Virus record (IMG/VR): IMGVR_UViG_3300028676_000003
Location: 1 to 64,000 of that record
DNA: 64,000 nucleotides
Reading direction: 5' to 3' (one strand)
Shown: positions 34,831 through 56,634 of the stretch, in pieces
How the letters are laid out: each line of letters begins with the position of its first letter
Position numbering within the stretch: the stretch's first letter is position 1
The notes under the pieces: generated by a model
Told to the model about the DNA's origin: nothing
Seen by the model: the letters and a program-made list of their open reading frames with translations, nothing else
Database searches by the model: none
Position numbers and translations under genes: made by a program

Positions 34831-34899
34831 TACATAGGCATGGTTTTTAGGTACAACAAAAAATCCCCAAACTACAATCGAGTTTGAGGTCTTGTTAAG

Positions 34900-34915
34900 T
34901 GTTCCACGTGGAACA
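34900..34915. promoter_or_regulatory. parS: parS-like centromere palindrome
   Basis: TGTTCCACGTGGAACA, intergenic, identical to 26513-26528. Confidence 0.75.
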
Positions 34916-35058
34916 ACTAGGTCACACACTACTATTATGCATAGCGTATCGTTAAAGTACAAAGGTACGACAAATATTTCTAATAAAAAACTTGTATATG
35001 AATTATTTTTGTTGTATCTTTGCAAACTTTTTTATTTTGTTGAGATTACTTCTAGCTA

Positions 35059-35090
35059 CAAAGGTACGAAATATAAATGAGACTACCAAA
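35059..35090 (-). promoter_or_regulatory. leftward Bacteroidota-type promoter
   Basis: Minus-strand TTTG (35087-35090), 20-nt spacer, TACCTTTG (35059-35066). Confidence 0.7.
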
Positions 35091-35100
35091 AAAATTCGTT

Positions 35101-35119
35101 ATTTAGACTCAGTCTAAAT
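35101..35119. promoter_or_regulatory. 9-1-9 palindrome, Fur-box-like
   Basis: ATTTAGACT-C-AGTCTAAAT. Confidence 0.45.
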
Positions 35120-35127
35120 GTTAACTT

Positions 35128-35190
35128 TGTCGTAGGACGGAGTCTACTCTTCCACCCATTACGGCACGCCCTTGTTTGTATTTTTCAACG
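35128..35190 (-). ncRNA. putative small RNA, GTAGACTCC family copy a
   Basis: Minus-strand TATCTTTA box at 35194-35201; no ORF; GTAG-ACTCCGTC-CTAC hairpin. Confidence 0.5.
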
Positions 35191-35296
35191 GTGTAAAGAT
35201 AGGAAAAAGATTTTGAATAAAAAAATAAAAATCCAGGTATTTTCTAAAAAGTTTTATATATCTTTGCCTTATCAGAAACCAACTAAATAAAATGAT

Positions 35297-35653
35297 ATGA
35301 AAAAGTTAAGTGAATTATATAGTATATTATTAGAGGACTTTAAAAACCGCAATAAACAAATCGATGAGACAGACGGTATATATATGGGTGTAAGTGAATA
35401 TAGCTTTTTATGTAACTGTTTAAAGCAATTACATAAAGAAGGAATTTTCAACGATGATGAGTTTGCGTATTTATATTCTCACTTTATATTACAGAAACCA
35501 AGTAGAACCGTAAATACTGCTTTTTATGACCATGAGTTATATGATGGAGATTATGTTTGGTTTAAGACGCTATGTTATAGTAAAGAAGCTTTTGCGTTAC
35601 GAGTTCAATTATTAACAAACATCATTTCTAAATTAAAAGAGGAATCTAAATAA
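35297..35653 (+). CDS. hypothetical protein
   Basis: After promoter box 35259-35266. Confidence 0.7.
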   Translation: MKKLSELYSILLEDFKNRNKQIDETDGIYMGVSEYSFLCNCLKQLHKEGIFNDDEFAYLYSHFILQKPSRTVNTAFYDHELYDGDYVWFKTLCYSKEAFALRVQLLTNIISKLKEESK

Positions 35654-35659
35654 ATCTAT

Positions 35660-35992
35660 ATGAATAAATCAGAACTCCTAGCGAAATTAAGTTCACAAAT
35701 AAGTGAACCGCTAACATATTGTAACGTAAACGATTTTGAAGAGGAAAAACATTTTTTGTTTAATATTGGTCGTGCGTTAATTTGGGTTATCCAAGAAAAT
35801 GGAATTGTAACAAAAGTATTAGATTCTGTTGAAATGGGTTATGATGGTTGGTTATACGATAACTATACGGAAGAGAATGAGAAGCTTGTTAATAATTCTG
35901 TTGTAAAGATAGAGATTCATAAAGGCGATGTTAGGATATTGAATTCTAAAGCCAATATAGAATTATTCAACGAATTGGTAAAATATCTTTAA
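35660..35992 (+). CDS. hypothetical protein
   Basis: Starts within the TAAATAAATCTATATG junction repeat. Confidence 0.7.
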   Translation: MNKSELLAKLSSQISEPLTYCNVNDFEEEKHFLFNIGRALIWVIQENGIVTKVLDSVEMGYDGWLYDNYTEENEKLVNNSVVKIEIHKGDVRILNSKANIELFNELVKYL

Positions 35993-36056
35993 AAAGATTT
36001 GGTAGTATGGATTTAATTTCTTAGATTTGTCCTATCAATTAAAACACATAGAAATT

Positions 36057-36521
36057 ATGAACAAGAAATTTAAATTACCAAAAACATTTGCTCTTAAATG
36101 GGTTAAAGCTTTAAAAAGTAGAAAATACAAACAAGGGAATAGTTTTTTAATCAATACTTTGACATCAGCAAAAGAAGCAACAATTGAAAATTCAACTTTT
36201 TGCTGTTTAGGTGTTGGTGCTGTTGTATGTGGTACACCAATTGAATATTTGGTTAGAATGTCATATATTGATAGACGTTTATTCAAAGAAATACCTAAAG
36301 AAATTGGCGGTTCAAGTAGTATATTGGTTAAAGTTTTATCTCGATTAAATGATGGAATTAGTAGAGACGAATTTAATCGATTGAATAAGAAATATAATTT
36401 CAGACCAAACATTATTGAATGGTGGAAACAACAACCAGAATCTACGTTAATCAAAACACCATTTTCTACCATTGCAAATTTCATTGAAGACAATTGCGAA
36501 TTTATTGATGAATCTAAATAA
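36057..36521 (+). CDS. hypothetical phage protein
   Basis: KWVKALKSRKYKQG...FCCLGVG motif; promoter box 36022-36029. Confidence 0.75.
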   Translation: MNKKFKLPKTFALKWVKALKSRKYKQGNSFLINTLTSAKEATIENSTFCCLGVGAVVCGTPIEYLVRMSYIDRRLFKEIPKEIGGSSSILVKVLSRLNDGISRDEFNRLNKKYNFRPNIIEWWKQQPESTLIKTPFSTIANFIEDNCEFIDESK

Positions 36522-36527
36522 ATCTAT

Positions 36528-36866
36528 ATGAGCATACATACATTTGTTAAAGACGTTAACGATTTTGGTAAAAAGCCAATTCAAAATAATCTATATGAAT
36601 ATGAGCAACACAGTCCACGTCCTAACGTGGGCGACACGCTTATATATTTCTATCCTAATGAAAATAAGTTAGGGATTTATACAGTAACCAAGGAATTGGA
36701 GTTCTATAAGGATAGAGAAGATTTTACATATTGTCGTGGCGAAATGCTGAGATGTGAGAGAACACCTGAGCAAGTAATTGACGACTTAAAGAAAACACAT
36801 TTGGGCTTCGCTATGGAGTTGCAAAAGACTATCATTGATTTATTAAAGAAATATCAAATAAAATAA
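36528..36866 (+). CDS. hypothetical protein
   Basis: 112-aa ORF. Confidence 0.7.
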   Translation: MSIHTFVKDVNDFGKKPIQNNLYEYEQHSPRPNVGDTLIYFYPNENKLGIYTVTKELEFYKDREDFTYCRGEMLRCERTPEQVIDDLKKTHLGFAMELQKTIIDLLKKYQIK

Positions 36867-36867
36867 T

Positions 36868-36951
36868 ATGAGCCAAACTGAAAAATTTGCAATTGTGTTA
36901 GATGCGTTCGTATTTGGGTTTATATTTATTTTTCATTTTTTATGTAGATAA
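36868..36951 (+). CDS. 27-aa single-TM microprotein
   Basis: MSQTEKFAIVLDAFVFGFIFIFHFLCR*. Confidence 0.5.
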   Translation: MSQTEKFAIVLDAFVFGFIFIFHFLCR

Positions 36952-37078
36952 ATTTGTATATGTCAAATATTAGTTTTATATTTGTCCTGTAGAAAAACGT
37001 GGAAACTTTAGGTTTCCGCTATCATTAACCAAGTAGCAACGCTGGCGCATTGCACAGCATAGCCTAAAACACAACACT

Positions 37079-37159
37079 ATGGAATCAATTAAATTAGCGG
37101 GTGCAATCATAGCACTTATTTTTACATTCATGTTTTCATTTCACTTAATCGTTAGATAA
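37079..37159 (+). CDS. 26-aa single-TM microprotein
   Basis: MESIKLAGAIIALIFTFMFSFHLIVR*; A-rich leader. Confidence 0.55.
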   Translation: MESIKLAGAIIALIFTFMFSFHLIVR

Positions 37160-37177
37160 TCTAAAACCAATTATATT

Positions 37178-37585
37178 ATGAACAAAGAACAATTATTAGA
37201 AGCTACAAAAGCAAATGTTGAAACTCTTAAACAAGTTTTAACTGATGAGCAAAAAGCAAAATTGGATTATTCGGAATTGCGTCCGTTTACTGCTGATATG
37301 TGTTTATTCGGCCAACTTTTTGGAGATGCGAACAGCGACGAAGCAAAAGCCTTATTACCTAAAACCCTTAAAGGTAGTTACCAAGTGAGAGGATTTTATG
37401 AACACTTTGCACGCTTACAGCCTAGTTTCCGTATTTCGTTTGACAGATTCAACGAATTTGAAGTTGCTGATGATGGACATTCAACACCTATTGAGTTATT
37501 TCTTATGACACGAACAAATTCCGAAGATTTGTTTAAGTATCTTAAAGGAGAAGTTGAAGCCTACGAGCCAGCGTTTATTGACTAA
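37178..37585 (+). CDS. hypothetical protein, paralog of 40769-41143
   Basis: CLFGQLFG and FKYLKGE versus CIYGQMTG and IQYLKGE. Confidence 0.75.
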   Translation: MNKEQLLEATKANVETLKQVLTDEQKAKLDYSELRPFTADMCLFGQLFGDANSDEAKALLPKTLKGSYQVRGFYEHFARLQPSFRISFDRFNEFEVADDGHSTPIELFLMTRTNSEDLFKYLKGEVEAYEPAFID

Positions 37586-37687
37586 ACAAAGGTAAGATAA
37601 AATAATTTAAAAATAAGTCATCATTTATTTGGTGGCTTATTTTTTTTGTTTTATATTTGCCTTATCAAACTAAAACACATACACAAA

Positions 37688-37981
37688 ATGGAAAATTCAA
37701 AATTAAAATCAGCAGTCTATACAAATCCTACGGGACTAATGAAAACCGAAAGATACCTAGTTGAAACACAAGAGGACTTAAACGCATTTCTTAAGGCATT
37801 CCCTGAGAATAAACAGTTTCTAGGTAAAACACTTAAAGAAGACGTTGAAAGAGGTAAAATCGTTTTGCTTACAGATATAACCCTGAGCGGTTTTAGTTCA
37901 TATTGTTATGAAACGATTGTAGGTAAAAGAGATATTATCACATTGCATCCTTCAAGTTTTATTCGTGTAACATCTAAATAA
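37688..37981 (+). CDS. hypothetical protein
   Basis: After hairpin/promoter module (box 37652-37659). Confidence 0.7.
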   Translation: MENSKLKSAVYTNPTGLMKTERYLVETQEDLNAFLKAFPENKQFLGKTLKEDVERGKIVLLTDITLSGFSSYCYETIVGKRDIITLHPSSFIRVTSK

Positions 37982-37987
37982 ATCTAT

Positions 37988-38539
37988 ATGAACTTAGGAG
38001 AACTTTTAGACGTAAAAATTAACTTTGATAAGTTGATGGATGCAAAATTGTTAGAAATGGTTTGTTTCTTTCAGGACAATATGTGGGACGGGTTTAGCGA
38101 CGAAGACGACCCGAAATTTATATCGAAAGACGATTTTGATGCTATTGAAGCGTTAGCCGATAAAATTAAACATATGACATATAACATTGGTTGCCCTAAT
38201 TCGGTTGCGCCTATGTTAGAAAGTATCATAACCCGTAAGTTAAAAGGTTGGCAGGGTTCAGATTCTGTTGAAACTGACGACCGTGTATATCATACGCCAT
38301 ACGTTGGCGAAGACGGAATAACAAGAGCAAAGAAACTTGTTACTAAAGGACACCGCAAAGGAAAACAAATAAAATCAACTGCTGAAAAGTATATAGTATT
38401 AAAATCTAAAGATTGGATGTTTCATGAAAAAGGTTTTATTATTAGAGGTCATTTCAGATGGAACAATAGAGGTTATATACTTTCAAGACGTGCAACTGAT
38501 TTGTTACAAGATTTTTATTTGAATAATTTTTGTGAATAA
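37988..38539 (+). CDS. hypothetical protein
   Basis: 183-aa ORF. Confidence 0.7.
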   Translation: MNLGELLDVKINFDKLMDAKLLEMVCFFQDNMWDGFSDEDDPKFISKDDFDAIEALADKIKHMTYNIGCPNSVAPMLESIITRKLKGWQGSDSVETDDRVYHTPYVGEDGITRAKKLVTKGHRKGKQIKSTAEKYIVLKSKDWMFHEKGFIIRGHFRWNNRGYILSRRATDLLQDFYLNNFCE

Positions 38540-38598
38540 ATTAGGTTATATCATTTCTTTTATATATCTTTGACCTATCAATTTAAAACATATACACA

Positions 38599-39372
38599 AT
38601 GAGTAAAGAAGTTAAAAGAAAACCATTATTAAGCACTAATAATCACAAAACGATTAAAGGCGAAAAGGTTGGTTATAAAACGTATATTCTTTATATGTCG
38701 CCTTTTAAGGCTAACAGCAAAGGTAAAAACGTTTGTTCCCACGCATCGACGGGTTGTGCTGAAAGTTGCTTAGCGGGTTCGGGTTTTGGTGGTATGTACG
38801 TTAATGTTAAAAACGGGCGTGTTGCAAAAACTGAGTATTTTTTAAGTAGTCGTACTGAATTTCTTTATCAGATTAAATCTGAGATTGAAAAGGCTATTAA
38901 AAAAAATGAAGCGTCAAACCTAAAGAATGACGAAAAGACTATCTTAACATTTCGTTTAAATGGAACAAGTGATATTGCATACGAAAAGTTTAGAGTTTTT
39001 GAAGGGAACAAAAACATTTTTGAAGTTTTTCCTGACGTACAATTTTACGATTATACAAAGAACTATTTAAGATTTGACAAGGTGTTACCTGCAAATTATC
39101 ACTTAACATTTAGCCGTTCAGAGACAAACGATGTTAAGGCTATGGAAATTCTTAAAAAGGGTTATAACGTTGCAATTGTTTTCGATAACGTTCCTAAAAC
39201 CTACAAGGGTTATGAAGTGGTAAACGGAGACAATGACGACCTGAGATTCTTAGATAAAAAGAATGTAGTCGTAGGATTGAAATATAAGAAAATGACGGGC
39301 AAAGGTGCTGACAATAAAAAGGCTTTTGAAAGTGGTTTTGTTATTCAAAACAAAGAATTGCAATTAACATAA
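38599..39372 (+). CDS. gp88-like protein (Cys-cluster phage family)
   Basis: NVCSHASTGCAESCL, FRLNGTSDI, FYDYTK, NYHLTFSRSE and GDNDDLRFLD motifs. Confidence 0.75.
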   Translation: MSKEVKRKPLLSTNNHKTIKGEKVGYKTYILYMSPFKANSKGKNVCSHASTGCAESCLAGSGFGGMYVNVKNGRVAKTEYFLSSRTEFLYQIKSEIEKAIKKNEASNLKNDEKTILTFRLNGTSDIAYEKFRVFEGNKNIFEVFPDVQFYDYTKNYLRFDKVLPANYHLTFSRSETNDVKAMEILKKGYNVAIVFDNVPKTYKGYEVVNGDNDDLRFLDKKNVVVGLKYKKMTGKGADNKKAFESGFVIQNKELQLT

Positions 39373-39431
39373 AATAATTTAAAAATAACTATCAATATAT
39401 TTGGTAGTTATTTTTTTTATGTCTATCTTTG
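39373..39431 (+). promoter_or_regulatory. hairpin-terminator/promoter module
   Basis: AAAATAACTATC/GGTAGTTATTTT with TTTG at the loop edge; TATCTTTG 39424-39431. Confidence 0.8.
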
Positions 39432-39457
39432 ACTTAACAAATTAAAACACACACATT

Positions 39458-39838
39458 ATGAAACTATCATTATCAAAAGAAGAGATTAACAAAGTATTTT
39501 TAGATGTTCTTTGCAACGGTGCTATCGGGTTTTTAGCTCAGTCAGACGTTGAAATGACATATTCTGACGAAGACTACCAAAAGGTACGTGAAAATGGAGA
39601 TTGTTACGAAGACGTTCTTTTAAAGATTATCAACACAGGTGGTAAGTTGGAGTTTGTCGATACTGAGGGCGACGAGTCGAAAACTCTTACACTTGAAGTG
39701 TTAACCAAGGCACTGACAAATATTGAAAACCAAGACTTTGCCGATTACGTTTTAACTCTATTAAAAGAAGAGGGAGACGCTGAAATTGGTTTATGTGTAT
39801 TGCAGTATATTCTGTATGACGATGTTATCTTTGGATAA
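39458..39838 (+). CDS. hypothetical phage protein
   Basis: Ends LQYILYDDVIFG. Confidence 0.75.
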   Translation: MKLSLSKEEINKVFLDVLCNGAIGFLAQSDVEMTYSDEDYQKVRENGDCYEDVLLKIINTGGKLEFVDTEGDESKTLTLEVLTKALTNIENQDFADYVLTLLKEEGDAEIGLCVLQYILYDDVIFG

Positions 39839-39898
39839 AAATAATATAACCTATCATTAATTTGATAGGTTTTTTTGTATATAGATTTATTTGACTAT

Positions 39899-39950
39899 AA
39901 GGCAGGACGGAGTCTACGTCTCAGGTGTTCAGCCTTGCTTTGTAATCTGA
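39899..39950 (-). ncRNA. putative small RNA, GTAGACTCC family copy b
   Basis: Minus-strand TACATTTA box at 39953-39960; GAGACGTAG-ACTCCGTC-CTGC. Confidence 0.5.
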
Positions 39951-40052
39951 TGTAAATGTACAACAAATAAATTTAATATCCTAATGAAATAAATTTTTTT
40001 ATTCAAAAACTTTGCATTATATTTGTCCTATCAAACTAAAACACATACACAG

Positions 40053-40544
40053 ATGGAAACTAATAAAGCTTACAGTAAAGTACTGACAGAAAAAAAAGAA
40101 GTTGCATTCTTTAAAAAGATTGACTCTTATAAAAATGAATTGGATTGCAAAGAAGCACGTACCCTAATGTATGGCGGTGTTAATTTGCATGTGAAACTAA
40201 ATAAATCTATTTCAATTGTTCCACTTAAAAAAGTAGATTTTGGATATATCATTTATCTATCGAATAATGTTCTTAGTGTTGGAGATTTTCTTTTTATATC
40301 AAATTGGGAGTTTGCCGAAATTGAACGTTTAGGATTAACACTAGACAAAGAACAGAATTTCAACGGTTGGAGACATTTTTGGTTTGCTGATAAGGTTATA
40401 GCTGAGTTTGTTAATCCTTTGGAAGTTCTACAAAAGCAACTTAATACTGCTAAAAACGAGAGAGACAATCTTAACGATACAATAGAACGTTACGAAAAGG
40501 AACAAATTGATTTTATTAAACGTTTTCAAAAGCAAATAAAATAA
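40053..40544 (+). CDS. hypothetical protein with C-terminal coiled coil
   Basis: Promoter box 40018-40025. Confidence 0.7.
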   Translation: METNKAYSKVLTEKKEVAFFKKIDSYKNELDCKEARTLMYGGVNLHVKLNKSISIVPLKKVDFGYIIYLSNNVLSVGDFLFISNWEFAEIERLGLTLDKEQNFNGWRHFWFADKVIAEFVNPLEVLQKQLNTAKNERDNLNDTIERYEKEQIDFIKRFQKQIK

Positions 40545-40545
40545 G

Positions 40546-40698
40546 ATGGAAAAATTATTTATAAAGAATAACTTAGAATATCCTTATTTTACAATAACAA
40601 CACTTAAGGTAAAAGACTACGCCTTAAGTGTTATTGAACAAATGAATATAGGAAATGTAGTAACCCTCAACAAAGAAGCAATAAAAAGAATAAAATAA
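40546..40698 (+). CDS. 50-aa hypothetical protein
   Basis: Open frame filling the gap. Confidence 0.5.
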   Translation: MEKLFIKNNLEYPYFTITTLKVKDYALSVIEQMNIGNVVTLNKEAIKRIK

Positions 40699-40768
40699 AT
40701 GTTAAAAAATTAGGTTATATGAAACTAATAATATATCTTTGACCTAACAATCTAAAACACATATAAAA

Positions 40769-41143
40769 ATGGAAAAATCAGTATTTTTAAAAGAGGTTAA
40801 AGCAGAACTAGACACTATCAAAAGTAGAGCAACCGAAGCAGAAATTGCTAGGTTGAATTTTGAAACTTTTGAGCATGATTCAAGAACTGCTTGTATTTAC
40901 GGTCAAATGACTGGTAATTGTGACGGTCAACGAGCTAACAGCTTGCAAGAAAAAACTTATGATAGGGTTCAAATTGAAGGCGAGTGCGTTTCTCCTACAT
41001 ATAACCCATTTAAAAAACAGGACTTTTCTAAAGGAAATTCTTACACAGCCTTGGAAAAATATTTGTTTATGGTAAAGCCTGTAACACACGGTAAAATCAT
41101 ACAATACCTTAAAGGAGAAATTAATAAAATAACTCTTAGATAA
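40769..41143 (+). CDS. hypothetical protein, paralog of 37178-37585
   Basis: See 37178; promoter box 40734-40741. Confidence 0.75.
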   Translation: MEKSVFLKEVKAELDTIKSRATEAEIARLNFETFEHDSRTACIYGQMTGNCDGQRANSLQEKTYDRVQIEGECVSPTYNPFKKQDFSKGNSYTALEKYLFMVKPVTHGKIIQYLKGEINKITLR

Positions 41144-41149
41144 ATCAAT

Positions 41150-41245
41150 ATGAAACTAGAAAAATTTATTATCGTTTTACCATATGCAATTATGGTTGGG
41201 TTGGTTTTATTATTCGTGTTGAATGTTCACACTAAAAACCACTAA
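41150..41245 (+). CDS. 31-aa single-TM microprotein
   Basis: MKLEKFIIVLPYAIMVGLVLLFVLNVHTKNH*. Confidence 0.55.
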   Translation: MKLEKFIIVLPYAIMVGLVLLFVLNVHTKNH

Positions 41246-41247
41246 AG

Positions 41248-41733
41248 TTGAATAAAGATATACTTGTAGTCCTAAAGACTAAAGAACCCCTATTTTGGGA
41301 GAGCGACAAATTTGACATAAACAAGGTTTATCGTTGTTTACCCGTTGAGAATGAGTATATTATCAATGGGAATCCGTTTACACTTGAAGAGTACGAAATG
41401 TATTTCGAATTGGCTTATGATAGAGTAATCAGGGATTGGACAGAGATAGGACTTGTAAAAGATGGAAAACCGATTTTCTATAAGGAATTTAAGGAACTGT
41501 TTGAGGTTGTAACATACGGCAAACAAATCAATAACTTAAGAATTGGTTTTGTTGGAAAACCTAAAGAGAACTATTACAAGTTTTACCCTAATGTTGATGC
41601 GAATAAACAGATTCAACTTAGAGAAATGTATACTATGTATGAATATACGCTAAATGGCGAACTCTACTTTTTAGATAATGGTAGCATACAATTTGGAACA
41701 TTTGGCAGATATATCAGTTACATAAGAAAATAA
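41248..41733 (+). CDS. hypothetical protein
   Basis: 161 aa, TTG start. Confidence 0.65.
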   Translation: MNKDILVVLKTKEPLFWESDKFDINKVYRCLPVENEYIINGNPFTLEEYEMYFELAYDRVIRDWTEIGLVKDGKPIFYKEFKELFEVVTYGKQINNLRIGFVGKPKENYYKFYPNVDANKQIQLREMYTMYEYTLNGELYFLDNGSIQFGTFGRYISYIRK

Positions 41734-41815
41734 TTTAAAAATAACTATCGATTTATTTGGTAGTTATTTTTTTTTACATTATCTTTGACTTATCAAACTA
41801 AAACATATAGAAATT

Positions 41816-42274
41816 ATGAAATGGACTTACGCACAAATTACAGAATGCACACCAAGACTAAAAAACCATTTATGTGCGGTATATAATTTTATACACTTGC
41901 ATAAGGGTTCAGAGAATCCAAAGCTTAAATCAATTGATTTTACCGTTGAAGGTGTATCGCTTGCAAAGCGTATACTAGACAAGTCAAACACGTCAGATAT
42001 TGTAATGGAGAAATTTGTTACTAACTTCTTAGATAGTCTTACAGCGATTGAAACAATGGCAATGATTCAACCAAGTGCAAAGATTTTCTTTTTTAAAACC
42101 GTAGATACTGAGGTTAACGGTATTGTAGAATCAATTGAGATTGGCGAAGAAGTTGTGTTTAATGACTTTGATATGGAAGAAATGAAATACAATATCGGGA
42201 TTCAAAAGAGACGTTATCCAAAGTTAAATCTTATCTATAAAAATTATATTCCTGCTGAGGTAGAAATTTATTAA
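41816..42274 (+). CDS. hypothetical protein
   Basis: After module with box 41780-41787. Confidence 0.7.
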   Translation: MKWTYAQITECTPRLKNHLCAVYNFIHLHKGSENPKLKSIDFTVEGVSLAKRILDKSNTSDIVMEKFVTNFLDSLTAIETMAMIQPSAKIFFFKTVDTEVNGIVESIEIGEEVVFNDFDMEEMKYNIGIQKRRYPKLNLIYKNYIPAEVEIY

Positions 42275-42337
42275 AAAACATTTGGTAGATTGAAATATTA
42301 TACATATCTTTGAAATATCAAAATAAAACAAAATACA

Positions 42338-42664
42338 ATGACAAAGACATTAAAGGTTATAGCAACAGGTTTGGTTCTAGGGAACTATTGGGGCGGTGGT
42401 CATGGTATATATGCTATGACAGTATTAGAAGCTGATTCAAAAGAAGAGCTTTTAAAGTTAGCTAATGAGGGTTTAAAAGATGGCTCATTAGATGATGGAA
42501 TGGGTTTTGAATCTCTTAGAGGTGCAATGCTCGATATTACGTTAAAAACCTCGATAACGTATGAGGACGAAGAGTATATCAATGAGAAGTATCAATTTGA
42601 TTCCGTTGGAACTCTTACAGTTGAGGAGTACGATATTTTAGAACGAACACTTTTAGGATTATGA
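42338..42664 (+). CDS. hypothetical phage protein
   Basis: GLVLGNYWGGGHG...LDDGMGFESLRGA. Confidence 0.7.
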   Translation: MTKTLKVIATGLVLGNYWGGGHGIYAMTVLEADSKEELLKLANEGLKDGSLDDGMGFESLRGAMLDITLKTSITYEDEEYINEKYQFDSVGTLTVEEYDILERTLLGL

Positions 42665-42951
42665 CAATTTCATTCAAAAAGTATAAAGGTCATTTAGAAT
42701 ATGGCTTTTATGGAAACAACAGAACCGCAATAAAATTAATAGATTCAACTGATGGCAGTCTAATTGCCGTTGCAAGTGTTAACCTCGTTGATGAGGACTT
42801 GAAAGATGATGAGATAGCTATCAAAGACCATGCCGAAAATGAAGGTATGTTAAAAAGTCTTATTGATGCTGAGGTGGTAAGCGAACCAATTCGATATGTC
42901 GAAAAGGGTTATGTAAAAATTCCTATCTGTAAACTATTAAAAACTAAATAG
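42661..42951 (+). CDS. DUF4313-like protein
   Basis: YGNNRTAIKL...ASVNL...IKDHAENEG...GYVKIPIC pattern. Confidence 0.5.
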   Translation: MTISFKKYKGHLEYGFYGNNRTAIKLIDSTDGSLIAVASVNLVDEDLKDDEIAIKDHAENEGMLKSLIDAEVVSEPIRYVEKGYVKIPICKLLKTK

Positions 42952-42957
42952 ATTAAT

Positions 42958-51343: not shown

Positions 51344-52177
51344 ATGAACACAGAAAACACATCAACACCAATTCAAAACAACTCTAAGCTAGTTGAATTT
51401 TTACCAAACGTAACAGGCGATAAGTACCAACGTTTAAACACAAATCGTGTAGTAGATGAAGCACACGTAAGACAATTAATCGAAAGCTTTACACGCTTCG
51501 GAACCGCTGGAGCAAATGTAATTGTAATCAAAACAAAAGCATTCGGAAACGGCAAAAAATATGAGTACCTAAAGTTAGACGGTCAACACACCGTGGAAGC
51601 TTGCAACCGCATCGATTTGCCTTATAACGTGTTAGTAGTTGAATTGCTAAATGATACACGTTTAGAAGTTACTTTGTTTATGTCAGCATTAAACAACAAC
51701 AAAAAAGCTTGGAGCAATAAAGTTTTTGTTAATGCATTCTTAAACACAAACGAAATCGAATCTTATATCGAATTGGCCGAACTGCTAAAAAATAGTAAGT
51801 TAACACTTACAGATATCCTTCACATCTTTTTGGGTAACGCTGGCCGTGTTGAAAACAATTTATTTCGTGAAGGTTTATTCACGTTTGATAAAATGGACGA
51901 TGGAAAAGAGCTTTTACAAGCTACTACAAAGGTATGGGATTTTATTCCAAACTCAGCACCTTGCAGACGTAGCCTATTTAAAGTTATGCGTATCGTAAAG
52001 GATTTTGATGTTTTTGCCGATGCAATTATAGCAAAAAGCCAAGAGGGACAAAAAGGAAAATTCACAACTGACGAAACAACGTTTTTCTATGAGTTGGAGA
52101 AGCTTGCAAAAGAAACCTTTAAAGGGCAAACGTTTGATTTTCCTAAAAAGAAAAAAGCGAAAGCAGTAACAAAATAA
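51344..52177 (+). CDS. ParB/Srx-like N-terminal domain protein (DGQH type)
   Basis: NRVVDEAHVRQLIESF...KLDGQHTVEAC...MSALNNNKKAWS. Confidence 0.65.
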   Translation: MNTENTSTPIQNNSKLVEFLPNVTGDKYQRLNTNRVVDEAHVRQLIESFTRFGTAGANVIVIKTKAFGNGKKYEYLKLDGQHTVEACNRIDLPYNVLVVELLNDTRLEVTLFMSALNNNKKAWSNKVFVNAFLNTNEIESYIELAELLKNSKLTLTDILHIFLGNAGRVENNLFREGLFTFDKMDDGKELLQATTKVWDFIPNSAPCRRSLFKVMRIVKDFDVFADAIIAKSQEGQKGKFTTDETTFFYELEKLAKETFKGQTFDFPKKKKAKAVTK

Positions 52178-52272
52178 AAACTTTTAAGTTTTAGTGAAAA
52201 TAACCCGTCATTTATTTGGTGGGTTATTTTTTTATACCTATATTTGTCTTATCAAACTAAAACACACACATT

Positions 52273-52548
52273 ATGCTATTCGAATTCCCTACTCTAGTTT
52301 TTCCAAACGATTACAAAGAAGACTTTGAAACGTTTTATGTAAGAAGCACAAAACCTATTACAAAGGTAGAGTTTGTACGCTATGAAGACGCTCTTATCTA
52401 TTTAAATGAGATAATCAAAAACAATGATAATTGCGACAATTATACAATTGATGGTTATAGCACTATATTAGGATTGCAAACAATCAGCTACGTAGACGAA
52501 AAGAACGTTATTCCTTATGGATTCATTCCATCAAACCAAGGCTATTAA
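52273..52548 (+). CDS. hypothetical protein, paralog of 49864-50124
   Basis: See 49864. Confidence 0.75.
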   Translation: MLFEFPTLVFPNDYKEDFETFYVRSTKPITKVEFVRYEDALIYLNEIIKNNDNCDNYTIDGYSTILGLQTISYVDEKNVIPYGFIPSNQGY

Positions 52549-52567
52549 TCATATAAATTTATATAAA

Positions 52568-52828
52568 ATGGAAAGAAACTCAATTTGGCAAAGCAACGGG
52601 ATAACATTTGGTTATCCTCAATGCTGTATAGATTCATTTTGCACTACTCACGGCTTTATGAATGCTGACGAAAATCAAAGAACTGTAGTGCAAAACGGCT
52701 TCGGGTTTATACCTTGTGCAACGCATGCAAAACAGATACTTAACAACGAAATAACAATTGAAAGTCTTATAAAGAATCGTGACCCTGAAATTAACGATTT
52801 TCCAAACGACCAACTAAGAAAACGATAA
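52568..52828 (+). CDS. Cys-containing hypothetical protein
   Basis: FGYPQCCIDSF...GFIPCATHA. Confidence 0.7.
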   Translation: MERNSIWQSNGITFGYPQCCIDSFCTTHGFMNADENQRTVVQNGFGFIPCATHAKQILNNEITIESLIKNRDPEINDFPNDQLRKR

Positions 52829-52849
52829 ACCAAATAAAACTATTTAGTT

Positions 52850-53119
52850 ATGAATACAAATGTAACAACACATCAAATAAATTCAAGTTCTGGACATTCC
52901 AGAGATTGGATTGATGCAGGTTTAACTTATGAGCAACAAAACAACCTAAATACTATAGGTTATACAGGAAGCTTAAACGGTGTTAAAACAAGTCAGGAAG
53001 CCTATTTAGAAAGCATTTCAACTGAAACCGTAGTATATAGACTTGTTCACTTAACATCTAATAATATGGATTTTAGTGATAAAGCTTTATTGATTAAGGT
53101 AGAAATATCAAAAGAATAA
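52850..53119 (+). CDS. hypothetical protein
   Basis: 89 aa, followed by hairpin ACCCTGAT/ATCAGGGT plus T run. Confidence 0.65.
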   Translation: MNTNVTTHQINSSSGHSRDWIDAGLTYEQQNNLNTIGYTGSLNGVKTSQEAYLESISTETVVYRLVHLTSNNMDFSDKALLIKVEISKE

Positions 53120-53239
53120 CGTAAGACCCTGATAATCAACATCAGGGTTTTTTATTTGAAATTATTTTCATTTTATAGTTGGATATATCAAATATAATAC
53201 TATCTTTGCATAGTAATAAGAAACCAACTAAATACACAC

Positions 53240-53587
53240 ATGAAAACACTTACACTTAAAACCGCAAACTCAATTGTTAACTTTTTAGACCTTGCAACAA
53301 CGCCACTAGAACCAATGCAATTGAAACGTAGAATAGTTACTCTAAGAACGTTTATTAATAGATTGATGCGTACACCTCAAAGAATAGAAAACATCGAATT
53401 AAGACCCTTAACAGTTTCAACTGATTATGAAGTTGAAGACGGCAAAGAAACAATCGTACAAACTTACACATCTAAGTTAGGCGGTGTAATCAACACACGT
53501 ATTGAAACTTACAAAAACAAACAAGTTGTAAGAGTATTCGCAAATATAGACAATGTATTCTTAACACGTAAAAACTTTATAGATTAG
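53240..53587 (+). CDS. hypothetical protein
   Basis: After promoter box 53201-53208. Confidence 0.7.
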   Translation: MKTLTLKTANSIVNFLDLATTPLEPMQLKRRIVTLRTFINRLMRTPQRIENIELRPLTVSTDYEVEDGKETIVQTYTSKLGGVINTRIETYKNKQVVRVFANIDNVFLTRKNFID

Positions 53588-53762
53588 TTTTAGTTGGTAG
53601 TGCCAGCAATGGCACGGGATTGAGCGGGGGTTGTGCCCCGCTTATTTTCTAAAGACTAAAATAAATAAAAAAAAAACACTAAAATAATTTGGTAGTATCA
53701 AAATAATTACTATCTTTACAAAGAATTTAAAAACACACATTAATCCAATTAAAACACTACAC

Positions 53763-54101
53763 ATGAACACACAAGCAATTAAAGTTATCACAGTTGATTA
53801 TCCTATTGAAATGACAGTTGATTTTTGCGAAACTGAATTATCATTCGGGAACATTGGAATTATCCAAATCAAAACGGCTGACGACGAAACACCAAAAGGA
53901 ATCCTATTCAACTCACTACTGGACAAACACGATAAAATTAAAGCTATTCAATTGGATGCTTTGGATTATCATAGAGTACTTTATTTTGATATTGAAGTAA
54001 TCAGAATCAAAAATCCTAACTTATCAGCTGAAGACCTTATGCACTTAACAACTGCACATATCACAACTCTTTACAATCAACAATTATTCACTAAAATCTA
54101 A
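53763..54101 (+). CDS. hypothetical protein
   Basis: 112-aa ORF. Confidence 0.7.
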   Translation: MNTQAIKVITVDYPIEMTVDFCETELSFGNIGIIQIKTADDETPKGILFNSLLDKHDKIKAIQLDALDYHRVLYFDIEVIRIKNPNLSAEDLMHLTTAHITTLYNQQLFTKI

Positions 54102-54105
54102 AGAC

Positions 54106-54354
54106 ATGAAAAAGTTATTTGTTCTTACTGTTATGCTCGCTTTGTTTGTCGCTTGTAGCGAATCAAAACCAAAGATTCAAACTAAGATAAACCCGCACCG
54201 CACCGCTTTTAAGCTAAACAATGAAAGTATTGACCTTGGCAAAGATGGAATTGTAACCGCTTCAAATAAGCATACATTTATTATCATTAACAACCTCATG
54301 CCAAACATGAATGTTTTACATGATACGGACTGTAAAAAATGTCATATAAAATAA
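54106..54354 (+). CDS. putative lipoprotein
   Basis: MKKLFVLTVMLALFVAC signal; C-terminal HDTDCKKCH. Confidence 0.7.
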   Translation: MKKLFVLTVMLALFVACSESKPKIQTKINPHRTAFKLNNESIDLGKDGIVTASNKHTFIIINNLMPNMNVLHDTDCKKCHIK

Positions 54355-54431
54355 TTTGAAAATAACCTATCATTTATTTGGTAGGTTATTTTTTTATACC
54401 TATCTTTACGAAGTATTTAAAAACCAATACT

Positions 54432-54713
54432 ATGAACTATAAAGGCGGTATCAAATTAGCTTATAAAGCATTTGAACAAGATTTAAAGAACTGCAAAGAC
54501 TATCAACAATTTAAAGCCGATGCAATTCGAATCGAGTATGAAGATAGACTTTTGAGAGAATCACAAAATCCTTACGAACTAAATTTAATCGACCCGATTT
54601 ATGTTTTACAACCCGTTGAAATTACTGTTTATTATAGAGTACCTGAAATAGATACAAAAGAAACAAGGCACTTAAACAGAAAGTTATTCACTAAACTAAA
54701 TAAATCTATATGA
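54432..54713 (+). CDS. hypothetical protein
   Basis: ATG start MNYKG. Confidence 0.65.
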   Translation: MNYKGGIKLAYKAFEQDLKNCKDYQQFKADAIRIEYEDRLLRESQNPYELNLIDPIYVLQPVEITVYYRVPEIDTKETRHLNRKLFTKLNKSI

Positions 54714-54838
54714 GAACTCTAACACTATCATTAAAAGCTTTTACAGAAATGCTATCAGGTTTAATCATTTCGGGCGTAACGTTTGAAGCTGAGGAAAAAG
54801 ACGGAATTGTACATATTACATTTACAGGCGGTTATTAA
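54710..54838 (+). CDS. 42-aa hypothetical protein
   Basis: Starts in the junction repeat; ATGA coupled. Confidence 0.55.
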   Translation: MRTLTLSLKAFTEMLSGLIISGVTFEAEEKDGIVHITFTGGY

Positions 54839-54862
54839 TCAATCTAAATAAAACTATATAAA

Positions 54863-55417
54863 ATGTTAGACAATAGTATATTAAGCGTAGGAACAATTTC
54901 AATCTTAAAAGATTTTGGTATTACAACCGTTGAACAGTTGCAAAATGCAACGCTTCCAAAAGTAGGGAACAAATCTCATATATATGCAACTAATAAGTTT
55001 AAACAAAGAAACTTAAATGAGATAAACGAATATTTAAACATTCTTAAATTTTCGCCTTATTTCGGAAAACAAATAAAAGTAACACTTGAACGTTTTACGG
55101 GCGTTTCTTTTTATAATGTAATTGGGTTTGATTCAAACAATGATATTCTTTTACAAACAATAAAAGGAACTCTAACAAAAACAAAAAAACCGTTTTCAGT
55201 TGATAAACTTTGGTTCGATACTGAGTTAACAGGTCGTAACATCGAAATATTAAATAAACCAATTGAGGGAGAAACTTACAGAGCTATTGGCGATTGTGGT
55301 ATGACAAAAGATATTGAAGTTGAAGGAGTTTTAAGCATTGAGGACGGCACATATTTGTTAACCAATAGATTTCAAAGAATATTTTCGGTTAACACTAAAA
55401 CCCTTAAATTAATTTAG
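54863..55417 (+). CDS. hypothetical protein
   Basis: 184-aa ORF. Confidence 0.7.
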   Translation: MLDNSILSVGTISILKDFGITTVEQLQNATLPKVGNKSHIYATNKFKQRNLNEINEYLNILKFSPYFGKQIKVTLERFTGVSFYNVIGFDSNNDILLQTIKGTLTKTKKPFSVDKLWFDTELTGRNIEILNKPIEGETYRAIGDCGMTKDIEVEGVLSIEDGTYLLTNRFQRIFSVNTKTLKLI

Positions 55418-55471
55418 TTATAAAATAAATGAGATTATCTTTGTAGTCTCATTCTCTTTTTTTATCTTTAC

Positions 55472-55520
55472 ACCGTAATACAGAGCAACCGACGAGGTGA
55501 GACGTAGACTCCAACCTACA
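55472..55520 (+). ncRNA. putative small RNA, GTAGACTCC family copy c
   Basis: TATCTTTA box 55463-55470; GAGACGTAG-ACTCCAAC-CTAC; no ORF. Confidence 0.5.
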
Positions 55521-55650: not shown

Positions 55651-56634
55651 ATGCAAGTAGTACACAACGCAGTAAGCCAACAAGAAGCAGTTAACGCAAA
55701 TTTAGCTAAAATCGAAAAACAATTATTTGAAGTAGTTAAAGTTCCTTTGGTTGCTCTACCTAATTGGACAATCAGACAATTTTTAAGCAATCCTAAAGCA
55801 ATGTTTATCGATTGGTTACGTAATCCATTTTATAAATCTCCTGTAGAGTTATACGGTGTTTACAGAAAAACAGGCGGTTCTTCATTAGGTGTTATGGGTT
55901 CGCAATTCGTTCCAATGCAACCAAAAGAGTTTTATAACAATATTGTTGCAACTGTTAACGAGTTTGGAGCTGATTTGGACTTAACAACACTACAATTTAA
56001 AGAGTATTGCGGTGGTTCAAAGATTGAGTTTTCAATCAAAATGTATCCTTTAAGCTTTAAAAATGATAAAGGATTGAATGACGTTACTAACTTAGAGGTT
56101 ACATTTTCAACTTCTTTTGACGGTTCAAAATCTAATGTAATAAGCCTTTATACTGAAAGATTAGTTTGTTTAAATGGTATGGTTGCAAACAAATTGCAAG
56201 GAACACTAAAAGGACGTAACACACTTAACGGAAAAGCAAAGATACTTTCTTACACAAAAGAACTTGCCGAAATAGTAAACGGTGCAAACGAATTTAAGGA
56301 AAAAATGGAAGCATTAGACAAAATAAAGCTTTCTAAGGAACAAATTGAAACGTTTAAACTATCTTTATTAGGTTTTAATAGAGAATCGCTTAAAACAAGC
56401 GAAAAAGCAGAAACACGCAAACATACAATGCTTGACGAACTTGACGAAGCTATTAACATCGAGTTTGAAAGAACAGGACAAACGGCTTTTGGATTGTTGC
56501 AAGGTGTAACGTATTATACAAATCACATGGCGAACACCAGCAAAACAATTTCTGATTCTGAATATATCAGATTTAACCAAGGCTTTAAAACCAACGAAAA
56601 AGCTCAAGAAATCCTTTTCGAATTGGTTGCATAA
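55651..56634 (+). CDS. DUF932-family protein
   Basis: STSFDGSKS...ERLVCLNG...FGLLQGVTYYTNH. Confidence 0.8.
   Translation: MQVVHNAVSQQEAVNANLAKIEKQLFEVVKVPLVALPNWTIRQFLSNPKAMFIDWLRNPFYKSPVELYGVYRKTGGSSLGVMGSQFVPMQPKEFYNNIVATVNEFGADLDLTTLQFKEYCGGSKIEFSIKMYPLSFKNDKGLNDVTNLEVTFSTSFDGSKSNVISLYTERLVCLNGMVANKLQGTLKGRNTLNGKAKILSYTKELAEIVNGANEFKEKMEALDKIKLSKEQIETFKLSLLGFNRESLKTSEKAETRKHTMLDELDEAINIEFERTGQTAFGLLQGVTYYTNHMANTSKTISDSEYIRFNQGFKTNEKAQEILFELVA

What the first reader, a model, noticed from the sequence alone, without database searches (positions are those of the whole stretch)
35128..55520. Three dispersed promoter-driven small RNAs sharing a GTAG-ACTCCnnC-CTRC hairpin
Seen: copies at about 35128-35190 (-), 39899-39950 (-) and 55472-55520 (+). 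Each follows a TAnnTTTA box (two begin CACCGT), has an A-rich TACA..(G)CAA segment, and ends in a 4-bp GTAG/CTRC stem with the 8-nt loop ACUCCGUC or ACUCCAAC. The one stem change keeps a G-U pair. None contains an ORF. Established: C-rich loops are seed regions in several sRNAs that pair with GGAG. Inference: a new phage sRNA family, acting by base pairing or as a protein sponge.
Basis: partly seen in the sequence, partly recalled or inferred. Interest (0 to 1): 0.7.

Follow-up and report, generated by a model that had tools for sequence, protein, structure and literature searches.

The report
Widespread structured small RNA of Bacteroidota phages
The three short look-alike sequences are real and belong to a large, previously uncatalogued family of structured small RNA genes found almost only in phages of Bacteroidota, whose function is still unknown.

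Summary
GTAGACTCCNNCCTRC occurs three times in the window (35132-35147 -, 39902-39917 -, 55504-55519 +). These are its only occurrences in the 368.5-kb phage record, against 0.12 expected by chance.

The copies are not private to this phage. Only 6 hits, all on MAG contigs, turned up in one genome for each of 185,579 prokaryote species. Nothing in Rfam 15 matches the element.

Members share this architecture:
- a promoter, of Bacteroidota TAnnTTTG/A type in about half of them;
- often a 5' hairpin (P1);
- R-G-C followed by a covarying hairpin (P2) with a one-base bulge;
- a 4-nt linker;
- the nearly invariant module GUAGACUCCNNCCUAC.

Copies c2 and c3 differ there by a compensatory GG:CC to CC:GG swap. 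G-U pairs and strand asymmetry point to selection on RNA of the named strand. Copies cluster in regions of small genes in three jumbo phages.

The function is not shown. My best guess is a separately transcribed, abundant small RNA whose invariant module binds a conserved host factor. Pairing with Shine-Dalgarno GGAG is unlikely, because only 6 of 423 ORFs have such a site. No RNA-seq run could be listed, so transcription is untested.

The parts
35194..35201 (-). c1 promoter-like -7 box TATCTTTA, followed by CACCGT
   Evidence: Read. A box of this kind lies 30-56 nt upstream in 52 of 109 family members, against 6.4% background.
35152..35171 (-). c1 GGG plus P2 hairpin: C(G)UGCC / GGGUGG arms with loop GUAAU(G)
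   Evidence: The covariance model R1 aligns c1 over its full length at 35.6 bits, E 1.2e-7. The stem contains two G-U pairs, so it works only on this strand.
35132..35151 (-). c1 linker AAGA plus invariant 3' module GUAGACUCCGUCCUAC
   Evidence: The module is identical in most family members.
35088..35119 (-). c1 downstream hairpin AUUUAGAC-uga-GUCUAAAU, then AACGAA and a run of 7 T; a likely 3' end of the c1 unit
   Evidence: Read. The same UUUAGA..UCUAAAUAAC hairpin lies 13-25 nt after CUAC in about 10 other phage loci. It occurs only once in this genome.
39953..39960 (-). c2 promoter-like -7 box TACATTTA
   Evidence: Read.
39922..39940 (-). c2 AAG-C plus P2 hairpin: CA(A)GG / CCUG with loop CUGAACA
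   Evidence: Read. The same sub-type occurs in L056 and L058, with GG:CC in one and GAU:AUC in the other.
39902..39921 (-). c2 linker AGAC plus 3' module GUAGACUCCGUCCUGC (U-G in the stem)
   Evidence: The same CUGC variant is seen in L083.
39838..39871 (.). Bidirectional terminator-like hairpin 30 nt downstream of c2, with a 9-bp stem and T runs on both strands
55440..55470 (+). c3 promoter: TTTG(TAGTCTCA), 19-nt spacer, then TATCTTTA
   Evidence: Read. The GTAGTCTCA promoter class occurs 5 times in the genome, including just before the tRNA cluster.
55483..55499 (+). c3 GAG-C plus P2 hairpin: CA(A)CC / GGUG with loop GACGA
   Evidence: Read. Relative to c2, the inner pairs are swapped on both sides (GG:CC to CC:GG).
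55500..55519 (+). c3 linker AGAC plus 3' module GUAGACUCCAACCUAC
55651..56634 (+). DUF932 gene 132 nt downstream of c3; a recurrent neighbour of the element, not part of it
   Evidence: Pfam PF06067, E 4.6e-18. A DUF932 gene lies within about 55-155 nt of the element in 9 loci. It is absent from Larrie and from the 60-kb clade.

Best explanation
The three copies are paralogous genes of a widespread structured small RNA family that is essentially restricted to phages.

Each unit is a small transcription unit read by the host RNA polymerase from a Bacteroidota-type promoter. The RNA is about 50-100 nt long. It folds into a variable, covarying hairpin P2, with a one-base bulge near its base and often a GNRA-type loop. 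In many relatives there is also a 5' hairpin, P1. Together these present a nearly invariant 3' module, (G)AAGA-GUAGACUCCNNCCUAC.

I think the RNA acts in trans and in bulk. Phages carry several copies, clustered among small genes, and some have strong promoters. I think the invariant module is a binding handle or decoy for a conserved Bacteroidota host factor, a protein or ribonucleoprotein, rather than a long antisense seed.

Shown: the family, its architecture, selection at the RNA level, restriction to phages, and clustering.
Inferred: separate transcription, action in trans, and the host-factor partner.

My odds:
- real structured RNA family: about 0.85;
- separately transcribed small RNA: about 0.65;
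- host-factor handle or decoy: about 0.3.

The confidence given for this explanation (0.35) refers to the whole statement, mechanism included.
For: **Family and distribution**
- Only 6 hits, all on MAG contigs, appeared in the genome-contig collection.
- Across 401 Bacteroidota genomes, the motif with up to 2 mismatches is no more frequent than its reversed control. No arrays were seen.
- Cultured carriers are Flavobacterium phage vB_FspM_immuto and Tenacibaculum phage Larrie.

**Structure**
- All five P2 pairs change on both sides: 112 such cells against 31 +/- 7.6 in shuffles. 97.5% of cells are paired.
- The hairpin abuts the linker in 76% of members, against 28% of shuffles.
- The sense strand is more stable than the antisense in 82 of 104 cases (p 8e-10), and 22% of pairs are G-U.
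- The P3 stem changes almost only through G-U, with one G-C to U-G double change.
- In the main sub-type, the P2 loop 4-mer fits GNRA in 39 of 40 distinct sequences.

**Transcription signals**
- A TAnnTTT[GA] box lies 30-56 nt upstream in 48% of members, against 6.4% background. T runs follow in 30%, against 17%.
- The genome uses such boxes before its genes: 100 of 423 ORFs, against 6.6% expected.

**Dosage and clustering**
- About 10 hits lie at 8-36 kb of a 288-kb phage, 5 at 296-306 kb of a 340-kb phage, and 3 at 35-55.5 kb here.

**Partner**
- Four carrier genomes share only thymidylate synthase at BLASTP E 1e-4. A dedicated phage protein partner is therefore unlikely, which points to a host partner.
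Against: - No transcript has been seen, because no RNA run lists this DNA.
- The promoters of c1 and c2 have only a -7-like box ending in A and no -33 TTTG.
- The 3' ends are poorly defined, especially for c3.
- P3 is 4 bp and weak. An alternative pairing, GAG-UAGA-CUC, and a different register in some variants (UAGAC/GUCUA) cannot be excluded.
- No host factor has been identified. The argument for a protein partner rests on exclusion.
- BLASTP at E 1e-4 can miss a small, fast-evolving phage partner.
- The immuto copy replaces ACUCCGUC with ACGGGCCG, so not all of the module is indispensable.
Confidence: 0.35

Rival explanations
1. Base-pairing regulator. The exposed ACUCC of the 3' module, or the whole GAGUAGACUCC stretch, pairs with GGAGU-containing sites in host or phage mRNAs and changes their translation or stability.
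For: The module is C-rich and conserved. The family has a constant 3' part and variable 5' hairpins, as many regulatory small RNAs do. One variant (L059:13896) reads GUGGACUAC, a 9-nt complement of a conserved 16S segment as I recall that segment; I did not check it against a 16S sequence.
Against: Only 6 of 423 ORFs carry a GGAG-type site at -18..-3, and Bacteroidota rarely use Shine-Dalgarno sites (established knowledge). No complement of the 18-nt motif with up to 2 mismatches is enriched in 401 Bacteroidota genomes or elsewhere in the phage. An 18-22 nt block kept invariant across very different phages is more than a seed needs. Several paralogues with the same 'seed' add no targeting range.
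Confidence: 0.2
2. Cis-acting transcription element: a terminator, insulator or RNA-polymerase-modifying signal (nut/put-like) that marks the boundaries of small transcription units, with no function for the released RNA.
For: The element sits directly after promoters. T runs follow 30% of members. c1 and c2 are followed by terminator-like hairpins. GNRA-type loops recall the boxB hairpins of lambdoid nut sites (plus established knowledge). Copies lie among many small genes.
Against: The downstream gene is convergent in about 40% of cases, which a processive antiterminator would not tolerate. The upstream gene is on the same strand in only about 60%, so the element is not a plain terminator for upstream genes. 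A 4-bp stem is a poor intrinsic terminator. Strict conservation of sequence across phages with different promoter types is not expected of terminators.
Confidence: 0.15
3. A new small catalytic or ligand-binding RNA, for example a self-cleaving ribozyme class. Such RNAs are typically about 50 nt, carry invariant junction nucleotides between variable covarying stems, and are common, multi-copy and of either orientation in phage DNA.
For: The design fits: variable, covarying stems flank about 20 invariant nucleotides, and a GNRA loop is available for tertiary docking. The element is phage-restricted and multi-copy, including tandem copies about 140-150 nt apart.
Against: No Rfam ribozyme or riboswitch model matches even at E up to 5. 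No pseudoknot or third helix with covariation could be found. The dedicated promoter and short unit fit a gene better than a processing site.
Confidence: 0.1
4. RNA mimic of a host defence RNA, that is an anti-defence decoy by sequence mimicry: a CRISPR repeat (Racr type), a crRNA-tracrRNA chimera (rAcrIIA1 type), or a type III antitoxin.
For: There is precedent for phage small RNAs that copy guide RNAs (bioRxiv 10.64898/2026.06.03.729762). The layout, a bulged stem followed by AAGAGUAGACUCCGU, loosely recalls the duplex-plus-nexus of Cas9 guides as I remember them. The location among small genes of unknown function fits an anti-defence role. About 20% of the sampled Flavobacteriales genomes carry cas9.
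Against: The motif is absent from host genomes: 6 MAG hits across the genome-contig collection, and no array-like multiples in 401 Bacteroidota genomes at up to 2 mismatches. Nothing similar lies within 1.5 kb of 20 Flavobacteriales cas9 genes. P2 varies freely in sequence, unlike a repeat:anti-repeat copy.
Confidence: 0.05
5. A DNA-level site (operator, origin or recombination site) with no RNA product.
For: GAGT-AG-ACTC is a near-palindrome. A conserved palindrome, TTTAGA..TCTAAA, lies next to c1.
Against: P2 and P1 keep pairing through compensatory changes while their sequences drift. G-U pairs make the structure strand-specific. Double-stranded DNA sites show neither property.
Confidence: 0.05

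Closest known systems
Orphan structured RNA motifs and small self-cleaving ribozymes found in phage and metagenome DNA (hammerhead, twister, pistol, hatchet, RAGATH motifs in Rfam)
   Same: About 50 nt; invariant nucleotides between covarying stems; phage-associated; multi-copy; either orientation; function mostly unknown.
   Different: No Rfam 15 model matches. No pseudoknot or multi-helix junction could be shown. The element has its own promoter. Cleavage is untested.
Lambda nut boxB / HK022 put RNAs (promoter-proximal phage RNA hairpins that modify RNA polymerase)
   Same: Located just downstream of phage promoters; a hairpin with a GNRA-like loop; conserved linear sequence next to it.
   Different: About 40% of copies face convergent genes. 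Many are followed at once by T runs. No boxA-like sequence lies on the functional strand. No N-like protein is shared by carrier phages.
RNA anti-CRISPRs (Racr solitary repeat units; rAcrIIA1 sgRNA mimic, bioRxiv 10.64898/2026.06.03.729762)
   Same: Phage-encoded small RNAs with their own promoters; a constant protein-binding scaffold; possible titration of a host effector.
   Different: Those are recognisable by sequence identity to host repeats or tracrRNA. This module has no counterpart in host genomes.
Bacteroides regulatory small RNAs (e.g. GibS, MasB, the paralogous FopS family), from my own knowledge of the literature
   Same: Bacteroidota-type promoters; Hfq-independent setting; paralogous families with conserved parts.
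   Different: Those are chromosomal and act through defined single-stranded seeds on mRNA start regions. This family is phage-restricted and offers no long complement to host sequence.

Membership tests
Any Rfam 15 family | Covariance-model match at or near the gathering score | tested here: not met
   At gathering scores the window yields only 3 tRNAs. An E<=5 scan of 12 member loci gives no hit on the element.
tRNA / tRNA-like | Cloverleaf with acceptor stem and T-loop | tested here: not met
   ARAGORN and the Rfam tRNA model call nothing at the three sites. There is no acceptor stem, and the 8-nt loop is not a T-loop.
RNA anti-CRISPR (solitary repeat unit) | Sequence identity to a CRISPR repeat of the host group | tested here: not met
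   No array-like multiples of the motif, at up to 2 mismatches, in 401 Bacteroidota genomes. The exact motif gives only 6 MAG contigs in the genome-contig collection.
crRNA-tracrRNA chimera mimic (rAcrIIA1 type) | Repeat:anti-repeat duplex and 3' scaffold matching a host Cas9 guide | tested here: inconclusive
   No similarity within +/-1.5 kb of 20 Flavobacteriales cas9 genes. However, tracrRNAs were not mapped and flanks were short. The P2 sequence is not conserved, which argues against the idea.
Intrinsic (Rho-independent) terminator | G+C-rich stem of at least 5 bp followed directly by a U run | tested here: not met
   P3 is 4 bp. A T run follows within 25 nt in only 30% of members. Separate terminator-like hairpins follow c1 and c2.
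Type III antitoxin RNA (ToxI-like) | Tandem 34-45 nt repeats next to an endoribonuclease toxin gene, with a host counterpart | tested here: not met
   Units are single or 140-700 nt apart, each with its own promoter. There is no host counterpart. No toxin family recurs among the neighbours.
Trans-acting small regulatory RNA (generic) | Discrete short transcript from its own promoter | not testable with these tools
   No RNA run lists the window. Promoter boxes are enriched 7.5-fold at a fixed distance.
Structured non-coding RNA (generic) | Helices kept by compensatory substitutions on one strand | tested here: met
   P2 shows double changes in 5 of 5 pairs, above all shuffles and slid controls. 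Strand asymmetry has p 8e-10. Caveat: alignment A3 was fitted to the model, and the A2 seeds were chosen for pairing.
Protein-coding micro-ORF | Conserved reading frame with a start codon | tested here: not met
   Only unrelated 21-41 aa TTG ORFs overlap the copies. P2 length varies by non-multiples of 3 across members.

The most novel reading that the evidence does not exclude
The family is a new functional class of phage RNA. It would be either a self-cleaving or otherwise catalytic fold, or an anti-defence or host-takeover decoy that titrates a conserved Bacteroidota protein. It would be deployed in several copies, probably early in infection, by very different aquatic and soil Bacteroidota phages, from 60-kb phages to 370-kb jumbo phages.
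Probability: 0.3. Interest if true: 0.85.

Novelty: new variant of a known kind. Interest (0 to 1): 0.66.

Why it matters
Phage-encoded small RNAs are known mostly from enterobacterial phages. None has been characterised for phages of Bacteroidota, a phylum that lacks Hfq and ProQ and uses unusual promoters and translation signals.

This element has about 20 invariant nucleotides, a covarying hairpin, and hundreds of members in marine, freshwater and peat viromes. It has no counterpart in cellular genomes and no Rfam entry. That makes it a well-defined, testable candidate for a new phage-host interaction.

Two cultured phage-host pairs carry it: Flavobacterium phage vB_FspM_immuto and Tenacibaculum phage Larrie. 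Experiments are therefore possible now. The element is also a useful marker of Bacteroidota phages in metagenomes.

Tried and rejected
- **Rfam.** Gathering-score and E<=5 scans gave nothing on the element.
- **Literature search by sequence.** It returned only hantavirus termini and primers. One preprint on intergenic features does not mention it.
- **RNA evidence.** 17 runs hold the DNA, mostly peat metagenomes, but no RNA run could be listed.
- **CRISPR repeat or tracrRNA mimicry.** No array-like hits and nothing near 20 cas9 loci.
- **A dedicated phage protein partner.**
  - DUF932 is a frequent neighbour but is absent from Larrie and from the 60-kb clade.
  - Four carrier genomes share only thymidylate synthase.
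  - tblastn of the window's DUF932 protein found no cultured-phage relative at 1e-8.
- **A 5' GGG pairing with the NNCC of the loop (pseudoknot or closing stem).** RNAfold proposes it for some members, but the 5' triplet varies (UGG, AAG, UAG) without matching changes.
- **By-eye readings.** An anticodon-arm mimic for P2, a kink-turn at the linker, a group II intron domain 5 and SRP helix 8 resemblances were all dropped because geometry or key residues do not fit.
- **A fixed orientation relative to neighbouring genes.** Orientation is mixed.
- **A broader second covariance model.** Not built, because MAFFT cannot align the length-variable P2 correctly.

Full report
**1. Observation**

The window is the first 64 kb of a 368,549-bp IMG/VR virus record. 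The 16-nt pattern GTAGACTCCNNCCTRC occurs at 35132-35147 (-), 39902-39917 (-) and 55504-55519 (+).
- With up to two mismatches allowed there are still exactly three matches. The expectation is 0.12, and none of 100 shuffles reaches three.
- The rest of the genome has no further copy, by pattern or by covariance model.
- Each copy is preceded by a TAnnTTTA box, and c1 and c3 continue with CACCGT.
- The only stem difference, CUGC in c2, gives a U-G pair.
- Only unrelated 21-41 aa TTG ORFs overlap the copies.

**2. It is a large family**

In about 110 of the 131 matches the motif follows AAGA, GAGA or GAGG, and a longer conserved block precedes it.

These come from marine, TARA and freshwater samples.

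By contrast, an 18-base version found only 6 loci in one genome for each of 185,579 prokaryote species. All 6 lie on short MAG contigs, and at least one of them carries two copies and phage-like genes. In 401 Bacteroidota genomes the motif with up to 2 mismatches is no more frequent than its reversed control.

Among 50,697 cultured phage records, the two BLAST queries I ran found the element only in Flavobacterium phage vB_FspM_immuto (four records) and in Tenacibaculum phage Larrie. Larrie carries two copies.

No Rfam 15 family matches, even at E up to 5.

**3. Anatomy**

An anchored alignment of 108 distinct members and constrained folds of 112 show the same plan:
- R-G-C;
- a hairpin, P2, whose first one or two pairs are followed by a one-base bulge;
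- a 4-nt linker (AAGA, GAGA, GAGG, UAGA or AGAC);
- the module GUAGACUCCNNCCUAC.

The three window copies fit this plan.
- c1 is GGG-C(G)UGCC-loop-GGGUGG-AAGA. It belongs to the commonest type and matches model R1 over its full length (35.6 bits).
- c2 (AAGCA(A)GG-CUGAACA-CCUG-AGAC) and c3 (GAGCA(A)CC-GACGA-GGUG-AGAC) form a sub-type also seen in L056 and L058.
- Within that sub-type the inner pairs read GG:CC, CC:GG and GAU:AUC.

Other features appear in subsets:
- Many relatives with Bacteroidota-type promoters have a further 5' hairpin, P1, starting a few bases after the promoter. Examples are GUAC-N7-GUAC, GUUG..CAAC and GUAUAG..CUAUAC.
- A subset that includes c1 has a conserved AU-rich hairpin, UUUAGA..UCUAAAUAAC, 13-25 nt after the module.

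**4. RNA or DNA, and which strand**

On the model-fitted alignment A3 (124 distinct rows), all five P2 pairs change on both sides. There are 112 such cells, against 31 +/- 7.6 in shuffles. 97.5% of cells are paired, and sliding the partners destroys the signal. An ungapped seed alignment gives the same picture, although those seeds were chosen for pairing.

Without any alignment:
- the hairpin ends next to the linker in 76% of members, against 28% of shuffles;
- 22% of predicted pairs are G-U;
- the named strand folds better than its complement in 82 of 104 cases (p 8e-10).

This is what selection on an RNA of that strand produces. Selection on a duplex DNA site would not produce it.

P3 (GUAG/CUAC) is nearly invariant. 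Its rare changes keep pairing through G-U, with one G-C to U-G double change and a few broken cells. Some variants use another register (UAGAC/GUCUA), and the immuto copy replaces the loop. The fold of the module is therefore not settled.

In the commonest sub-type the apical 4-mer of P2 is GAAA, GCAA, GAGA, GUAA or GGAA in 39 of 40 distinct sequences. That is a GNRA signature. c1 has GUAA.

**5. Expression signals and host**

A TAnnTTT[GA] box lies 30-56 nt upstream of the module in 52 of 109 members, against 6.4% of random positions. T runs follow 30%, against 17%.

The other half of the family belongs mainly to a clade of about 60-kb phages. That clade has a different recurrent motif, GCTATACAC, at gene starts and directly before the element.

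In this genome (33.6% G+C):
- TAnnTTTG lies within 80 nt upstream of 100 of 423 ORFs, against 6.6% expected;
- GGAG-type ribosome-binding sites precede only 6 of 423.

These are the expression signals of Bacteroidota. That agrees with the two cultured hosts and with the Bacteroidota and Flavobacteriales MAG bins.

c3 has a complete promoter: TTTG, a 19-nt spacer, then TATCTTTA. Its extended -33 element, GTAGTCTCA, occurs at only five promoter-like sites in the genome. One of them lies just before the tRNA cluster. c1 and c2 have only the -7-like box.

No RNA-seq run lists this DNA. The holders are mostly peat metagenomes, so transcription is inferred, not shown.

**6. Context**

Orientation relative to the nearest ORFs is mixed.

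Copies cluster in three jumbo phages:
- 3 within 35-55.5 kb here;
- about 10 within 8-36 kb of a 288-kb phage with terminal repeats;
- 5 within 296-306 kb of a 340-kb phage.

Tandem copies 140-150 nt apart occur. Around the copies I looked at directly (this window, immuto and Larrie), the neighbours are mostly small ORFs of unknown function.

A DUF932 gene lies within about 55-155 nt of the element in 9 loci, including c3. It is missing from Larrie and from the 60-kb clade.

Four carrier genomes were compared: this phage, a complete 64.5-kb phage, Larrie and immuto. They share only thymidylate synthase at BLASTP E 1e-4. I therefore found no phage protein that travels with the RNA.

**7. Mechanism**

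The facts that constrain the mechanism are:
- an 18-22 nt block kept almost unchanged across unrelated phages;
- no identical or complementary stretch in host genomes;
- no common phage protein;
- several copies per genome, some with strong promoters;
- a GNRA-capped, freely covarying hairpin beside the block.

I conclude that the most likely reading is an abundant trans-acting RNA whose invariant module is recognised by a conserved host protein or RNP. This would make it a handle or decoy. I put this at about 0.3.

The rivals are short-seed base pairing (0.2), a cis-acting transcription element (0.15), a new small ribozyme or aptamer (0.1), a structural mimic of a defence RNA (0.05) and a DNA site (0.05).

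Such sites are almost absent before genes here.

**8. Comparison and novelty**

The closest known things are:
- orphan phage-associated RNA motifs and small ribozymes;
- nut/put elements;
- RNA anti-CRISPRs, including a recently reported Cas9 guide mimic;
- Bacteroides small RNAs.

The element fails the testable membership criteria of each of these (see the membership table). It is best called a new, uncatalogued family of a known general kind, a phage-encoded structured small RNA, with an unusually strong sequence constraint and a wide environmental distribution.

**9. Verdict**

The finding is more general and more interesting than stated, but its function is open and transcription is unproven.

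Noticed in passing
window 34858-34975 (-): There is a second candidate small RNA gene downstream of c1 on the same strand. A TAccTTTG box sits near 34960. About 85-100 nt without an ORF follow, ending in a terminator-like hairpin at 34889-34865 with a T run. No Rfam match.
   Followed up: partly
window 35055-35090 (-), 46530-46570 (+), 48780-48820 (+), 55440-55470 (+); genome 230593 (+): A distinct promoter class, TTTG(G)TAGTCTCA-N12-19-TAnnTTT(G/A), has only five promoter-like sites in the 368-kb genome. One lies just upstream of the tRNA cluster and one drives c3. Related phages use TTTGGTAGTGTCA before their copies of the RNA.
   Followed up: partly
window 48961-49639 (+): Rfam calls three tRNAs in this cluster (36, 45 and 61 bits). 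ARAGORN calls only the last one and cannot assign its anticodon ('ga' at position 35), so these tRNAs look atypical.
   Followed up: no
window 35099-35119 (-) and about 10 other phage loci (e.g. L004, L030, L051, L058, L084, L110): A conserved AU-rich palindrome or hairpin, TTTAGA-N3-7-TCTAAATAAC, lies 13-25 nt after the RNA module in a subset of phages. Its sequence conservation would also fit a protein-binding operator. It occurs once in this genome.
   Followed up: partly
window 55651-56634 (+); L019, L033, L051, L059, L083, L093, L106, L123: A DUF932 (PF06067) gene is a recurrent immediate neighbour of the RNA gene. It is usually convergent, with about 125 nt between the 3' ends. A TTTGCAAAG(A/G)TA motif sits in the gap.
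   Followed up: partly
L107 8550-9160 and other loci of the ~60-kb clade (L008, L012, L017, L077 ...): These phages repeat a module before each gene: GCTATACAC ... TTACAGAC ... TGATAATA ... AAAAACAAATAAnATG. They use long GTGACGTTAGCC...GGCTA..GTCAC hairpin terminators. GCTATACAC may be a phage-specific promoter or a processing site.
   Followed up: no
G451:C5 (3663, 20709, 23129) and G256:C1:1222682: Near-perfect copies of the module occur three times on one contig of a Bacteroidota genome, and once inside a 1.2-Mb-plus chromosome contig. These may be prophages or mis-binned phage DNA carrying the RNA.
   Followed up: no
Carrier genomes: G000 76662-77780, G580 43414-44181, Larrie 48391-49374, immuto 26884-28155: Thymidylate-synthase-family genes are the only proteins shared by all four carrier genomes at BLASTP E 1e-4. 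The Larrie and immuto versions are unusually long (327 and 423 aa).
   Followed up: no
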